Part shown: piece after piece, positions 17,730 through 24,277 of the stretch
How the letters are laid out: every line of letters begins with the position of its first letter
Numbering within the stretch: position 1 is the stretch's first letter
Sequence record: NC_031120.1
DNA: 64,000 nucleotides
Reading direction: 5' to 3' (one strand)
Program-made: the position numbers and the translations under genes
Notes under the pieces: generated by a model
Told to the model about the DNA's origin: nothing
Databases searched by the model: none
Seen by the model: the letters and a program-made list of their open reading frames with translations, nothing else

Positions 17730-17767
17730 GCCCACCCTTCGGGGTGGGTTCTTTCTTTTTCTTTTTT
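17730..17767 (+). terminator. Intrinsic terminator
   Basis: GCCCACCC-TTCG-GGGTGGGT plus long T-tract. Confidence 0.85.
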
Positions 17768-18919: not shown

Positions 18920-19951
18920 ATGCATCAGTATCACGAACTCTTACAGCAGGTGCTCAGTATCGGCCACGACAAAGCTGACCGTACCGGCACAGGCACTACG
19001 TCCTATCTCGGCGCACAGATGCGCTTCGATCTGCAAGACGGATTCCCGCTGGTCACCACGAAGAAACTCCATCTGCGTTCCATCATTCATGAACTGCTGT
19101 GGTTCCTCAACGGGGACACCAACATCAAGTACCTGAATGACAACGGTGTCTCTATCTGGAACGAGTGGGCGAACGAACTCGGTAACCTGGGGCCGGTTTA
19201 CGGTAAGCAGTGGCGTGAATGGTTAGACACTAAACTCATTGTGGCTGCTGACGTCGCCACAGCTAATCGTCTTGCCAGTAAGGGCTACGTTCTGGTTGGG
19301 CATGTTCCAAATCCTGGCAACGGGCCGACACTTGCCGTTTGGCAGAAAGGCCATGACCAGATTTCTAAAGTTCTTGACCAGCTGCGCAACGATCCTGATA
19401 ACCGCCGTATCATTGTATCGGCCTGGAACGTCGGCGAGCTAGACGATATGGCGTTAGCTCCATGCCATGCTTTCTTCCAGTTTTACACCCATGAGCTGTC
19501 ATTAGAGGAGCGGGTGAATTGGGCAGAAGATAACGATAACGAACTCTGGTCTGATTATGTCCACAACACGCACGTACCCGCACCTAAGCGATTAGAGTGG
19601 TTGGATAAAGCCAACGTGCCAACCCGTATGTTGTCTTGTCAGCTGTATCAGCGTAGTGCGGATATGTTCCTCGGTGTACCGTTCAACATCGCGTCTTACG
19701 CATTGCTGATTCACATGGTGGCGCAACAGGTTAACATGGTACCGGGCGAGTTCGTTTGGACTGGCGGTGACGTCCACATCTACTCCAATCACATGGAACA
19801 GGTAGAAGAACAGCTGTCTCGTAAACCGAAAGCGTTGCCGACGCTGGTTATCAAACGCAAACCGGACAGTATCTTCGATTACAAATTCGAAGACTTCGAA
19901 CTGGTAGGCTACGATCCGCATCCGGCGATTAAAGCCCCGGTGGCTATTTAA
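18920..19951 (+). CDS. thyA: Thymidylate synthase
   Basis: [63 protein letters not shown]; start moved to 18920. Confidence 0.98.
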
Positions 19952-20422: not shown

Positions 20423-21241
20423 ATGAACAAACTCTTTTGGTTCACCGACTGCGCTTACGCTACCCCGATGCAACCGTATTTCTTTGGCGCAGTAGGCGCA
20501 CGCGATATGGCCCACGTTTACGCATTGCTGGGTACCAACAAAATCGATACGTTGGAGCTGGGCGAAACCACGTACGAAGGCCAAATCACTTGTGGTGAAG
20601 CCATCCGTCAGCTCGAGCCGCGCACCTTCAACGATCCACGTAAGACCACCGTGCAGGTTTATCAGGTAAACGAAGGCGTTGACCTGACCGAACGTAAAGC
20701 GTACATCGCTGACCTGCTGCAACGTCAATACGGCTGGACGCCGGAGTCTATCGTGATTCACATGGACCGCTTAGATCTTATTCCGGGTGAGTGTGCCAGC
20801 AGCGGTACGCAGATGTGGCGTGCCTGGGCAAACGTAGAAACCATCGCAGACCCACTGCCGCTGTTCATCACCTTTGAGCACGGGGCGGATGATGTGAACT
20901 TCACGCCAACAGGTGAAACCGTGGAGTACGAGTACAACATCATCGTCGACAAACCACTGACGCCAACATGGCACATGGTTGACCTGCTGGAAGAAGCCGA
21001 ACTGCTGGAACTGTTCCCAGAAGCGGCCTTCGTGTGTCGTAAAGCCACCATGTCCTCTGTCGCCGTAGAAGGCTGGGCGCAAGTGGATGAAGTCTACGGT
21101 AACCACACCGTAACCCTGTGGCTCAATCCTGACTGGAAAGAGCTGCAAGAAAAGGCCGTTGCCCTGATCGTTGCTGAAGCTAAAATGCAGCAGGAAGCAA
21201 ACGATACCGCGGCACTCAACCTCCCTGAAATCAACGCATAA
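20423..21241 (+). CDS. Hypothetical protein
   Basis: Abuts previous stop; N-terminal domain shared with 22868..23704. Confidence 0.8.
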   Translation: MNKLFWFTDCAYATPMQPYFFGAVGARDMAHVYALLGTNKIDTLELGETTYEGQITCGEAIRQLEPRTFNDPRKTTVQVYQVNEGVDLTERKAYIADLLQRQYGWTPESIVIHMDRLDLIPGECASSGTQMWRAWANVETIADPLPLFITFEHGADDVNFTPTGETVEYEYNIIVDKPLTPTWHMVDLLEEAELLELFPEAAFVCRKATMSSVAVEGWAQVDEVYGNHTVTLWLNPDWKELQEKAVALIVAEAKMQQEANDTAALNLPEINA

Positions 21242-21251
21242 GGTGTATACA

Positions 21252-21704
21252 GTGTCTAAGACCCAAATCAATTACGATCTTGTGGTGAAAGAGCTGTCCA
21301 AAGGACTCATCGCTTTGGACTCTGACGTGGCTAAGCAATGTAACATGTTGCCACATATCGCGCTCAGTGAGTTCCGTACTATTCGCTATGGCGCGGGTCG
21401 TCAGAAAGGCGTGACGGAGTTTGTGACCAAGTTGGCCGGGGAACATCAAGGGCCGGTTTTAGTCTTAACTCACGCGACGCCGTTACGCGATGAGTTCATA
21501 TTCCGGGTCGAAGGTAACTATCCCGGTAAAAACAATATCACATCGTTAAGTGGGTATTTCCCGGAGAATTGGCGAGCTGAGAAATTTAGTCTCGTCGTTA
21601 TCGATGAAGCTGGTTTCTTCTTTAAGAAGTTCGGCTACGACAAAATGTATCGCAGCCTGGCAACCCAGACGACCGACGATGTGGTCATTCATTTAATTAA
21701 TTGA
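21252..21704 (+). CDS. Small single-domain P-loop NTPase-like protein
   Basis: GTG start with AAGGTG RBS; YGAGRQKGVT (RQxGKT-like, Lys to Val) and LVVIDEA Walker B. Confidence 0.6.
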   Translation: MSKTQINYDLVVKELSKGLIALDSDVAKQCNMLPHIALSEFRTIRYGAGRQKGVTEFVTKLAGEHQGPVLVLTHATPLRDEFIFRVEGNYPGKNNITSLSGYFPENWRAEKFSLVVIDEAGFFFKKFGYDKMYRSLATQTTDDVVIHLIN

Positions 21705-21711
21705 GGAAGTT

Positions 21712-21867
21712 ATGGAAAAGCAAGTTATTGAAAAACAAGACACCAATACCCTGGACGATATGTTTGGTGGCGATATCCCGGGCTTAGATCCGGATGTCGG
21801 TGTAGAGGGTGGCGTTGACCCGTCGAAAGAAGACGACAACTGCACCGGCGGTGCTTGCAAAATTTAA
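21712..21867 (+). CDS. 51-aa acidic peptide ending in an NrdA-type redox tail (DDNCTGGACKI)
   Basis: Below the ORF-track cutoff; GAGGA RBS, ATG 21712, TAA 21865-67, then a terminator. Translation MEKQVIEKQDTNTLDDMFGGDIPGLDPDVGVEGGVDPSKEDDNCTGGACKI. Confidence 0.85.
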   Translation: MEKQVIEKQDTNTLDDMFGGDIPGLDPDVGVEGGVDPSKEDDNCTGGACKI

Positions 21868-21874
21868 CGTATCT

Positions 21875-21911
21875 GGGTGTCCTTATGGACACCCCCTTTC
21901 TCTTTTTTTTA
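21875..21911 (+). terminator. Intrinsic terminator
   Basis: GGGTGTCC-TTAT-GGACACCC plus T-rich tail. Confidence 0.8.
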
Positions 21912-21930: not shown

Positions 21931-22842
21931 ATGGGCGAACAATTTGCCATTCAAATTCCGTACAACATCATCATTAACCCGAACGATCACTTAGAACAAG
22001 TTAACAAACTGTTGGCCGGGTTCTGTAAACGGCAGTTTGTCAAAGAGTGGGCGTTTGAAGTGCTGTACGCATTGAGCATTAACAGCGAAACTGGCGCAAC
22101 CCGCGTGGAGGGTAAAGTGAAGACCGAAGACGGTCGTCTGGAAATTAATGACTTTGAGATGCCGTGGGTGTTGTCCGGGGTTGAATTCAAAGGCACCGTT
22201 AACCATCCCCGCTACATCCGTCTGTTCCAGGTGAAGCAATGTATTGAAAACGTACTGGGCTGGTCACAGGCACGCGGTATTCTCGAGAACGGTAAATGGA
22301 CTACGCAGGTTACCAAATTCTACGAAGAAGACGGTGAAGCGGCAACCGGTATCAGCAAGACCAAAAAGCGTCTGATCATGGACGGTATTGGTGACGCGTT
22401 GGTCGTATTGGTTAACGTACTGGCGCTGACCAAGTTTGGTGCAGAAACAATTAACGACATGCTGGTCGAAGCGCGTGCGCGTATTGAGAACAACGTGCCG
22501 TTCGGTGACGCTCACCGCCTGTTCCACAAAATGCGTTTGGAATTTACCCAGGCGAACGATGCCTTCTATCAGGGTGAAGACTGGCGTATGCGCAACGATG
22601 TCTCTGTAGAAGATCAGCCGGAACTACCCGCTATCTTCTTGATGGATGTGGAAGCCCGTGTGGTCAACGGCCTGTGGTATATGGAAGCCTTGGCGCGTGC
22701 TTACGAAGTCACGATCGAGCAGTGCTTCTCATTGGCCTGGGACGAAATCAAAGACCGTCGTGGCTTCCTGAACGCTGATGGCATCTTCGTCAAAGAAGCT
22801 GATATGACCGAAGAACAGAAAGCCGCACAGGCTACCGCTTAA
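21931..22842 (+). CDS. mazG: MazG-like NTP pyrophosphohydrolase with N-terminal extension
   Basis: W..ARGI...Q..K..EEDGE...G...I.DGIGD.LVVL core and C-terminal AWDEIKDRRG...GIFVKE typical of phage MazG-like proteins. Confidence 0.8.
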   Translation: MGEQFAIQIPYNIIINPNDHLEQVNKLLAGFCKRQFVKEWAFEVLYALSINSETGATRVEGKVKTEDGRLEINDFEMPWVLSGVEFKGTVNHPRYIRLFQVKQCIENVLGWSQARGILENGKWTTQVTKFYEEDGEAATGISKTKKRLIMDGIGDALVVLVNVLALTKFGAETINDMLVEARARIENNVPFGDAHRLFHKMRLEFTQANDAFYQGEDWRMRNDVSVEDQPELPAIFLMDVEARVVNGLWYMEALARAYEVTIEQCFSLAWDEIKDRRGFLNADGIFVKEADMTEEQKAAQATA

Positions 22843-24235: not shown

Positions 24236-24277
24236 AGGTACCACCTACCCGCTGGGGTAGGTGGCCTTTCTTTTTTT
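24236..24277. terminator. Bidirectional intrinsic terminator
   Basis: CCACCTACCC/GGGTAGGTGG stem flanked by A- and T-tracts between convergent genes. Confidence 0.85.

What the first reader, a model, noticed from the sequence alone, without database searches (positions are those of the whole stretch)
21712..21867. Stand-alone 51-aa peptide that copies the C-terminal redox tail of class Ia ribonucleotide reductase (NrdA)
Seen: an unannotated ORF with GAGGA RBS and its own terminator, encoding an acidic, disordered peptide ending ...PSKEDDNCTGGACKI-stop. Established: E. coli NrdA ends ...PSIQDDGCESGACKI; this CxxxxC pair on a flexible tail re-reduces the active-site disulfide and is the Trx/Grx docking site. 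The match covers PS, DD, both Cys, GACKI and the free C-terminus. It closes the operon carrying thyA and the dead MazG copy, and no nrdA body is nearby. Inference: a trans-acting redox shuttle that speeds host or phage RNR turnover, a partner for a tail-less phage NrdA, or a decoy that captures Trx/Grx or tail-binding factors.
Basis: partly seen in the sequence, partly recalled or inferred. Interest (0 to 1): 0.88.

Follow-up and report, generated by a model that had tools for sequence, protein, structure and literature searches.

The report
Free-standing ribonucleotide reductase tail peptide
A real, strongly conserved 51-residue phage protein ends in a copy of the flexible cysteine-pair tail that normally sits on the large subunit of bacterial ribonucleotide reductase, and the same free "tail" occurs in several unrelated phage families that have no reductase of their own and in Neisseria-family bacteria, which suggests an undescribed way of acting on DNA-precursor supply.

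Summary
Window 21712-21867 (+) is gp246 of Erwinia jumbo phage vB_EamM_Caitlin. It is annotated only as a hypothetical protein, with a Shine-Dalgarno site before it and a terminator-like hairpin after it.

Its last 12-15 residues match the extreme C-terminus of class Ia NrdA. A profile of the family searched against the whole PDB returns only NrdA C-termini, and a Colwellia NrdA shares its last 12 residues with family members.

The gene is under strong purifying selection (dN/dS about 0.04 against SPN3US). It belongs to a family of more than 200 protein clusters, 39-120 residues long, with two cysteines in nearly every member.

The family occurs in:
- SPN3US-like, Alexandravirus and about 60-kb phages;
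- ICP2-like Vibrio podoviruses, where the tail follows a zinc-ribbon-like part;
- chromosomes of Neisseriaceae.

In phages the gene always lies among deoxynucleotide-metabolism genes. Caitlin, pEa_SNUABM_1 and ICP2 have no class I reductase, so the tail-less-NrdA-partner and decayed-gene readings fail.

Best inference, not shown: a trans-acting dithiol shuttle or mimic in the host thioredoxin/glutaredoxin-to-NrdA electron relay. Whether it boosts or brakes the enzyme is unresolved. I found no Pfam or NCBIfam family and no paper describing it.

The parts
21703..21707 (+). Shine-Dalgarno-like GAGGA, 4 nt before the ATG; overlaps the TGA stop of gp245 (21702-21704)
   Evidence: similar purine-rich sites precede most family members
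21712..21867 (+). CDS gp246: 51-aa acidic protein (13 D+E, net charge -9, pI 4.05), stop codon included
   Evidence: dN/dS about 0.04 against SPN3US over the last 30 codons; PHROG 14561, E 4e-31
21712..21774 (+). Residues 1-21: variable N-terminal part. Its length and sequence drift between relatives; in other lineages it is replaced by long extensions, a zinc-ribbon-like part or a fused protein
21775..21828 (+). Residues 22-39: second conserved stretch, kept in phage-type members and not found in NrdA tails. The share of the 23 phage-type members identical to Caitlin's residue runs from 13 to 100 % per column: 69-95 % at residues 22-28, 65-100 % at 31-36, lower at 29-30 and 37-39
   Evidence: profile test against the NrdA body not significant
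21829..21864 (+). Residues 40-51: copy of the NrdA C-terminal redox tail. An acidic run is followed by two Cys four residues apart, the second Cys third from the free C-terminus
21875..21904 (+). Terminator-like hairpin (21875-21894) plus T-rich tail. Together with the site at 17730-17749 it brackets the unit gp240-gp246
21252..21704 (+). gp245, the upstream neighbour in SPN3US-like phages: 150-aa P-loop/RecA-like alpha/beta domain, possibly a degenerate thymidine-kinase-like protein
   Evidence: hhalign against ICP2 TK: E 5.7e-4, probability 29.5 %; no Pfam hit
20423..21241 (+). gp244, 272 aa, unknown function (PHROG 10453). Its homologue is fused in frame to the tail peptide in one metagenomic jumbo phage (L031). 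It has no invariant Cys
21931..22842 (+). gp247, MazG-like nucleotide pyrophosphohydrolase, the constant downstream neighbour in SPN3US-like phages
18920..19951 (+). Thymidylate synthase gp242, in the same transcription unit
   Evidence: PF00303, E 3e-116
   Evidence: PHROG 10269; weak MazG PHROGs at E 1e-8

Best explanation
gp246 is a translated, intrinsically disordered, acidic small protein. Its functional end is a free copy of the C-terminal dithiol tail of class Ia ribonucleotide reductase alpha (NrdA).

In NrdA this tail enters the active site and re-reduces the disulfide formed at each turnover. It then swings out and is re-reduced by thioredoxin or glutaredoxin.

The most likely mechanism (inference) is that the free peptide is reduced by host Trx/Grx and delivers electrons in trans to the active site of the host NrdA. 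That would add shuttle capacity to the re-reduction half-cycle and raise deoxynucleotide output for phages that carry thymidylate, dCMP, dNMP or dUTP enzymes but no reductase.

Shown: the homology of the tail, purifying selection, distribution, absence of a phage RNR, and linkage to dNTP genes. Inferred: binding to NrdA and to Trx/Grx, and the direction of the effect.
For: 1. Tail identity to NrdA C-termini in end-to-end register.
2. Both Cys and their spacing are kept. Of 152 family proteins fetched, 143 end in the C-x-x-G-A/G-C-K-I/L pattern, and 141 of those 143 have exactly two Cys in the last 40 residues. This fits retained dithiol/disulfide cycling better than mere site occupancy.
3. dN/dS is about 0.04: 13 synonymous against 3 non-synonymous differences over 30 codons, Caitlin versus SPN3US. 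The tail region is 93 % identical where the neighbours gp244, gp245 and gp247 are 28, 55 and 58 % identical. This points to a slowly evolving, probably host, partner.
4. In five phage lineages the gene lies among deoxynucleotide genes:
   - thyA and MazG in SPN3US-like phages;
   - dCMP deaminase in Alexandravirus;
   - dCMP deaminase, dNMP kinase and ThyX in a contig of about 60 kb;
   - dUTPase in a 154-kb contig;
   - MazG and thymidine kinase in ICP2.
   Of the steps in that pathway, only RNR needs a dithiol shuttle (established biochemistry; PMC11903788, PMC4078304).
5. Three whole genomes carrying the peptide have no class I RNR (annotation).
6. E. coli, the host of two carrier phages, has an NrdA with this tail.
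7. AF2 gives no fold: pLDDT 54.6, coil.
Against: There is no direct evidence of binding or of redox activity.

A free peptide must compete with a tethered tail of high local concentration.

The tail and nucleotides compete for the same pocket (PMC11903788), so the net effect could be inhibitory.

Neisseriaceae have an NrdA with its own tail and still keep the peptide. This fits a regulator at least as well as a booster.

In N. meningitidis the gene lies inside the isc operon.

Only class I RNR was excluded by sequence search. Class II and class III were excluded by annotation alone.

The NrdA tails of Erwinia, Salmonella and Vibrio were not read here.
Confidence: 0.4

Rival explanations
1. Competitive regulator or brake of class Ia RNR. 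This would be analogous in logic to the small disordered fungal RNR inhibitors. The free tail would occupy the active-site channel or the tail-docking surface of NrdA and so tune dNTP output or couple it to the cell's thiol redox state.
For: The alpha tail and nucleotides compete for the same pocket (PMC11903788). Neisseriaceae with an intact NrdA tail keep a monocistronic copy at varying chromosomal sites. The protein is small, acidic and disordered.
Against: Caitlin, pEa_SNUABM_1 and ICP2 have no RNR of their own, yet invest in thymidylate and dNMP enzymes that depend on a deoxyribonucleotide supply. Blocking the only reductase looks counter-productive. Occupancy alone would not require both Cys to be kept in nearly every member.
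Confidence: 0.2
2. Trx/Grx-directed mimic. The peptide would be a substrate or decoy that captures host thioredoxin or glutaredoxin, or passes their electrons to an acceptor other than NrdA, such as an unrecognised phage enzyme in the gp244/gp245/MazG block.
For: The NrdA tail is the known docking substrate of Grx1 (PDB 1qfn is the top hit). An in-frame gp244::peptide fusion exists in one phage. gp245 and MazG-like genes are linked in two unrelated phage families.
Against: gp244 has no invariant Cys. gp244 and gp245 are absent next to the peptide in Alexandravirus, in the 60-kb phages and in bacteria. A peptide with its resolving Cys intact cannot hold a reductant in a lasting mixed disulfide (inference). 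The tail is far better conserved than any phage neighbour.
Confidence: 0.13
3. Metal or Fe-S related small protein. The two Cys plus the acidic stretch would bind iron, zinc or a cluster, and the likeness to NrdA would be secondary.
For: In N. meningitidis the gene lies between iscS and iscU. Two metagenomic proteins join an IscU N-terminus to the peptide. The ICP2 version carries a zinc-ribbon-like N-terminus.
Against: The isc location is not kept in Kingella, Alysiella, Wielerella or N. leonii. Phage contexts are dNTP genes, not Fe-S genes. Twelve-of-twelve identity with a true NrdA tail is hard to explain by convergence.
Confidence: 0.07
4. Decayed 3' end of a lost nrdA gene, or a chance ORF with no function.
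For: The tail is homologous to NrdA. One family member has an 8-of-12 match to NrdA residues 465-476 upstream of the tail, which could be a trace of origin by internal deletion.
Against: dN/dS is about 0.04. The gene has its own SD site and terminator. It is conserved in 70+ phage records and 200+ protein clusters. There are no flanking nrdA remnants. The family profile shows no significant likeness to the NrdA body.
Confidence: 0.02

Closest known systems
C-terminal redox tail of class Ia ribonucleotide reductase alpha (NrdA), e.g. E. coli residues ~745-761, N. gonorrhoeae NrdA (PDB 7MDI), Colwellia NrdA
   Same: Acidic run, two Cys four residues apart, the same last five residues, a free C-terminus and predicted disorder. 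Up to 12 of 12 residues are identical.
   Different: It is not attached to any reductase body and is encoded as its own gene. It has an extra conserved stretch upstream that NrdA tails lack.
E. coli NrdA C-terminal 25-mer in mixed disulfide with glutaredoxin 1 (PDB 1QFN)
   Same: This synthetic free tail peptide is a recognised Grx1 substrate, and it is the best PDB hit of the phage peptide's last 20 residues.
   Different: It is a laboratory fragment with one Cys replaced. The phage and bacterial peptides are natural genes with both Cys.
Small intrinsically disordered RNR regulators of fungi (Sml1, Spd1 and relatives)
   Same: Small, disordered proteins proposed or known to act on the large subunit. 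From my own knowledge, Sml1 is reported to interfere with the large subunit's C-terminal tail function.
   Different: No sequence relationship was detected (no Pfam hit). Those proteins are not copies of the tail and carry no conserved Cys pair.
Dedicated RNR reductants (NrdH, thioredoxin, glutaredoxin; phage T4 NrdC)
   Same: Auxiliary redox components of RNR turnover, some of them phage-encoded.
   Different: Those are folded thioredoxin-fold proteins with a CxxC motif. This peptide copies the substrate side of the relay, not the reductant side.
Cys-rich zinc-finger C-terminal domain of class II RNR (PMC5704485)
   Same: A C-terminal electron-delivery module that combines a zinc site with a redox Cys pair. 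The ICP2 version of the peptide (zinc-ribbon-like part plus tail) has a similar layout.
   Different: That domain is part of the enzyme and belongs to a different RNR class. No sequence comparison was made here.
PHROGs 14561, 38753, 24014, 20277
   Same: The peptide belongs to these phage protein families (E 4e-31 to 9e-3).
   Different: All four are labelled 'unknown function'. Splitting the proteins into four families hides the shared tail.

Membership tests
Class Ia ribonucleotide reductase alpha subunit (NrdA) as a protein family | Catalytic alpha/beta-barrel body with active-site cysteines (Pfam RNR large-subunit domains) | tested here: not met
   The protein is 51 aa. No Pfam or NCBIfam hit. 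tblastn of E. coli and Colwellia NrdA finds only the tail in the whole genome.
Class Ia ribonucleotide reductase alpha subunit (NrdA) as a protein family | C-terminal Cys pair four residues apart, at the extreme C-terminus, preceded by acidic residues | tested here: met
NrdA-type redox tail as a working module | Flexible or disordered segment | tested here: met
   AF2 mean pLDDT 54.6, pTM 0.14, almost all coil; composition. This is a prediction only.
NrdA-type redox tail as a working module | Reduced by thioredoxin or glutaredoxin | not testable with these tools
   Only indirect: the best PDB hit is the NrdA peptide solved bound to Grx1.
NrdA-type redox tail as a working module | Delivers electrons to the NrdA active-site disulfide | not testable with these tools
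   No multimer prediction or assay was available.
NrdA-type redox tail as a working module | A host or partner NrdA of the matching type is present | tested here: inconclusive
   E. coli (host of EC001 and Lh1B) and N. gonorrhoeae NrdA carry the tail. Erwinia, Salmonella and Vibrio NrdA were not read.
RiPP or double-glycine leader peptide precursors | Adjacent maturation enzyme or peptidase-transporter genes | tested here: not met
   The neighbours are dNTP-metabolism genes or unrelated housekeeping genes. Caitlin's radical SAM genes lie about 57 kb away.
Thioredoxin-fold reductants (Trx, Grx, NrdH) | Thioredoxin fold with a CxxC active site | tested here: not met
   No Pfam hit, no fold, and the Cys spacing is four residues, not two.
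Thymidine kinase (for the neighbour gp245) | PF00265 match with an intact Walker A motif and a lasso domain | tested here: inconclusive
   No Pfam hit. hhalign against ICP2 TK gives E 5.7e-4 but a probability of 29.5 %, over the P-loop and DEA-x-FF region only. The fold is generic RecA/P-loop.
PHROG 14561 (phage protein family, unknown function) | Full-length profile match | tested here: met
   E 4.3e-31, residues 1-51 against profile positions 1-51 of 51.

The most novel reading that the evidence does not exclude
A diffusible, gene-encoded 'spare tail' for class Ia ribonucleotide reductase. This would be a 40-70-residue protein with which phages lacking any reductase plug into the host Trx/Grx-to-NrdA electron relay to raise or retune deoxynucleotide synthesis. 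Neisseriaceae, including N. meningitidis, would use the same protein as an endogenous trans-acting RNR cofactor or regulator. It would be the smallest known auxiliary metabolic gene acting on RNR, and the first natural case of an enzyme's redox tail living as a separate protein.
Probability: 0.35. Interest if true: 0.9.

Novelty: new variant of a known kind. Interest (0 to 1): 0.78.

Why it matters
RNR turnover limits DNA-precursor supply, and its re-reduction half-cycle is an open area of research and a possible drug target. A natural free tail, present in several unrelated phage families and in the Neisseria family, would give a direct handle on three things:
- how the tail docks to the active site and to thioredoxin or glutaredoxin;
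- how reductase-less phages with genomes up to 267 kb secure their dNTPs;
- a conserved but unnamed small gene of N. meningitidis and its relatives.

It also shows that four separate 'unknown' PHROG families and many 'hypothetical proteins' share one recognisable functional end.

Tried and rejected
1. Partner of a tail-less phage NrdA: rejected. There is no NrdA or NrdB in Caitlin, pEa_SNUABM_1 or ICP2.

2. Decayed nrdA end: rejected by selection, gene signals and the lack of flanking remnants.

3. The non-tail part as a mimic of the NrdB C-terminal tail. I saw a short acidic D-D-F-D-G likeness to the Colwellia NrdB end. The PDB search with that part found only an unrelated acidic peptide, and the family profile found no NrdB. 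Not supported.

4. The non-tail part derived from NrdA residues 465-476. One member gives 8 of 12 identities. The shuffle p-value is about 0.003 alone and 0.037 over 13 queries. The family profiles are no better than shuffles. Left as a weak lead.

5. gp245 as a thioredoxin-like partner: rejected. Its fold is a generic P-loop/RecA-like domain.

6. gp244 as the redox client of the tail, prompted by the L031 fusion: there is no invariant Cys.

7. Literature: searches for the terminal letters, for locus tags and for phage/RNR/tail terms found no description of such a peptide.

8. Pfam and NCBIfam: no family.

All sequences quoted in this report come from tool outputs.

Full report
**Identity of the window and the ORF.**
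The window is the last 64 kb of Erwinia phage vB_EamM_Caitlin (NC_031120.1; Machinavirus, a 241-kb SPN3US-like jumbo phage), at 100 % identity. Window position equals record position minus 177,147.

The ORF at 21712..21867 (+) encodes 51 residues. The record annotates it only as hypothetical protein gp246.

GAGGA sits four bases before the ATG and overlaps the stop codon of gp245. A terminator-like hairpin (21875-21894) with a T-rich tail follows the stop. A second terminator-like site lies at 17730-17749. The two bracket a unit running from gp240 to gp246, which includes thymidylate synthase and a divergent MazG-like gene.

**Is the likeness to the NrdA tail real?**
With the last 20 residues, the only PDB hits at E <= 10 are two NrdA C-termini, both aligned to the very last residue:
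- the E. coli NrdA C-terminal 25-mer solved bound to glutaredoxin 1 (1qfn_B, E 0.62);
- a 773-residue NrdA (7mdi_A), which PMC11226230 identifies as the N. gonorrhoeae enzyme.

With a 31-sequence family profile, all 14 PDB hits with E <= 10 are class Ia NrdA C-termini, best E 0.018.

I fetched nrdA from an E. coli chromosome. Its last 19 residues share P-S, D-D, both Cys and the final five residues with the peptide.

A genome scan found a bona fide Colwellia nrdA-nrdB-yfaE locus. That NrdA ends in 12 residues identical to those of family members P0005-P0007.

**Is it a functioning gene?**
tblastn finds the peptide in 73-74 phage records. Residues 22-51 are 93 % identical between Caitlin and SPN3US or CR5. 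The neighbours gp244, gp245 and gp247 are only 28, 55 and 58 % identical to their SPN3US homologues.

Over the last 30 codons, Caitlin and SPN3US differ by 13 synonymous and 3 non-synonymous changes, giving dN/dS of about 0.04.

The large protein databases give 31 representative clusters at the 50 % identity level with a phage-type profile, nearly all 39-157 residues long, and in most the match ends at the C-terminus. A second profile gives 222 clusters.

Of the 152 family proteins I fetched, 143 end in the pattern C-x-x-G-A/G-C-K-I/L. These 143 are 39-120 residues long (median 49), and 141 of them have exactly two Cys in their last 40 residues. Several of the remaining nine are visibly frameshifted or run-on gene calls.

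Searches give the column shares relative to Caitlin's own residues. Because the 143 were selected on that end pattern, the 100 % values at C44, G47, C49 and K50 are partly by construction.

AF2 gives no fold: mean pLDDT 54.6, coil. This is consistent with disorder.

**Distribution beyond jumbo phages.**
The free tail occurs in:
- SPN3US-like phages of Erwinia, Salmonella, Escherichia, Cronobacter and Proteus;
- Alexandravirus and Derbicusvirus;
- metagenomic viral contigs of about 60 kb and 154 kb;
- ICP2-like Vibrio cholerae podoviruses, where gene 68 joins a zinc-ribbon-like part with two CxxC motifs to the same tail;
- chromosomes of Neisseriaceae.

The Neisseriaceae carriers are N. meningitidis, N. 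polysaccharea, N. leonii, N. arctica, N. iguanae, Kingella, Alysiella and Wielerella. In these bacteria the gene is a short stand-alone ORF whose neighbours change from genus to genus:
- between iscS and iscU in N. meningitidis;
- between leuS and glnE in Kingella;
- next to a peroxiredoxin in Alysiella;
- before polA in Wielerella;
- between usp and purM in N. leonii.

Most members have a purine-rich site before the ATG.

In one metagenomic jumbo phage (L031) the gp245 homologue is missing and the gp244 homologue is fused in frame to the peptide.

So the tail tolerates many N-terminal carriers. The free C-terminal end is what is kept.

**Context.**
All 26 viral loci hold a small ORF ending at the tail. 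None has NrdA or NrdB within 6 kb.

The neighbouring genes are deoxynucleotide enzymes in five lineages:
- thyA upstream and MazG-like downstream in SPN3US-like phages;
- dCMP deaminase two genes upstream in pEa_SNUABM_1;
- a dCMP-deaminase-like gene, dNMP kinase and ThyX around the peptide in a contig of about 60 kb;
- dUTPase directly upstream in a 154-kb contig;
- MazG and thymidine kinase directly upstream in ICP2.

Caitlin gp245, the usual upstream neighbour, folds as a generic P-loop/RecA-like domain. It aligns weakly to the ICP2 thymidine kinase over the P-loop and the DEA-x-FF region (hhalign E 5.7e-4, probability 29.5 %). A MazG / TK(-like) / tail-peptide trio may therefore recur in two unrelated phage families.

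**No phage reductase.**
The annotations of Caitlin, pEa_SNUABM_1 and ICP2 list no RNR of any class and no thioredoxin or glutaredoxin.

tblastn with E. coli and Colwellia NrdA and NrdB finds nothing except the tail itself.

The weakest phage hits to the tail are true NrdA ends, in Vibrio phage C-ZP2022 and Cronobacter phage CR3. The search can therefore see reductase-borne tails where they exist.

**Mechanism.**
Established knowledge: in class I RNR the active-site Cys pair is oxidised at each turnover. [quoted passage not shown] The tail and nucleotides compete for the same pocket (PMC11903788; PMC4078304 abstract).

Four observations bear on the peptide's role:
- It keeps both Cys.
- Its tail is far better conserved than any phage neighbour.
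- It travels with dNTP genes.
- It occurs in reductase-less phages.

From these I infer that it acts on the host Trx/Grx-to-NrdA relay, most likely as an added trans-acting electron shuttle (confidence 0.4).

A braking or regulatory role (0.2) fits the bacterial copies and the pocket competition. It fits reductase-less phages less well.

A Trx/Grx-directed role with another acceptor (0.13) and a metal or Fe-S role (0.07) are weaker.

A decayed gene end is excluded as the present state.

**Comparison with what is known, and novelty.**
The peptide is a homologue, or a captured copy, of a known functional module: the NrdA tail. It fails membership in NrdA itself.

It is not related by sequence to the fungal disordered RNR regulators or to thioredoxin-fold reductants.

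It has no Pfam or NCBIfam family. It is split over four 'unknown function' PHROGs. Six literature searches found no description of it.

I rate it a new variant of a known kind.

**Limits.**
- Class II and class III RNR were excluded by annotation only.
- The NrdA tails of Erwinia, Salmonella and Vibrio were not read.
- No multimer modelling was available.
- Only three carrier genomes were checked in full.

Noticed in passing
L016:6082-6210 (N. meningitidis GCA_000191305.2 contig AEQJ01000026.1): The Neisseria copy of the free tail peptide lies inside the isc operon, in the order iscR-iscS-peptide-iscU-iscA-hscB. The database gene call (69 aa) starts inside the end of iscS. The likely start gives 42 aa.
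   Followed up: partly
L031:5206-6132 (IMGVR_UViG_3300011862_000001, 237 kb): In-frame fusion of the gp244 homologue (44 % identity over residues 1-267) with the tail peptide. The gp245 homologue is missing. This is a single metagenomic contig, so an assembly artefact cannot be excluded.
   Followed up: partly
L059:47076-48219 (Vibrio phage ICP2, genes 66-68): The ICP2 podovirus has the genes MazG, thymidine kinase and a 70-aa protein in a row. The 70-aa protein is made of a zinc-ribbon-like part (two CxxC motifs) plus the NrdA-type tail. The start of gene 68 overlaps the stop of the TK gene.
   Followed up: partly
proteins P0146 and P0153 (ENA metagenome contigs under 1 kb): These are 89-aa proteins whose first ~48 residues are an IscU N-terminus (PF01592) and whose remainder is the Neisseria-type tail peptide. 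They could be a real fusion or a chimeric assembly; this is undecided.
   Followed up: no
P0007 residues 42-53 versus E. coli and Colwellia NrdA residues 465-476: The stretch just before the I-P-G-L motif of CR5-type peptides matches 8 of 12 residues of the NrdA segment that directly follows the active-site Cys of the C-T-L-S-A-F stretch. Shuffle p is about 0.003 alone and 0.037 over 13 queries. It is not seen with family profiles.
   Followed up: yes
window 18920-19951 (+): Thymidylate synthase gp242 is 343 aa but matches the whole 266-position Pfam profile. It must therefore carry about 80 residues of insertions.
   Followed up: no
window 21252-21704 (+): gp245 has a Walker-A-like G-A-G-R-Q-K-G stretch that lacks the canonical G-K-S/T, and a V-V-I-D-E-A-G-F-F stretch like the one in thymidine kinases. 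It may be a degenerate TK-like domain without the lasso part.
   Followed up: partly
window 24240-24265, both strands: A bidirectional terminator-like hairpin (10-11 pairs) lies between the convergent genes gp249 (+) and gp250 (-).
   Followed up: no
Caitlin record 138804-141042 (outside the window; L005:38804-41042): Two adjacent radical SAM domain genes (gp171, gp172) lie next to the lysis genes. They are not linked to the peptide.
   Followed up: no
E. coli genome collection: A 1.5-kb Colwellia nrdA probe matched 204 places on E. coli plasmids as well as all 5,426 chromosomes. This suggests plasmid-borne nrdA-like genes.
   Followed up: no
L021:4220-4717 (Alysiella crassa): In Alysiella the peptide gene is divergently adjacent to a peroxiredoxin (AhpC-TSA/Redoxin) gene. 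This is the only bacterial context seen with a thiol-redox neighbour.
   Followed up: no
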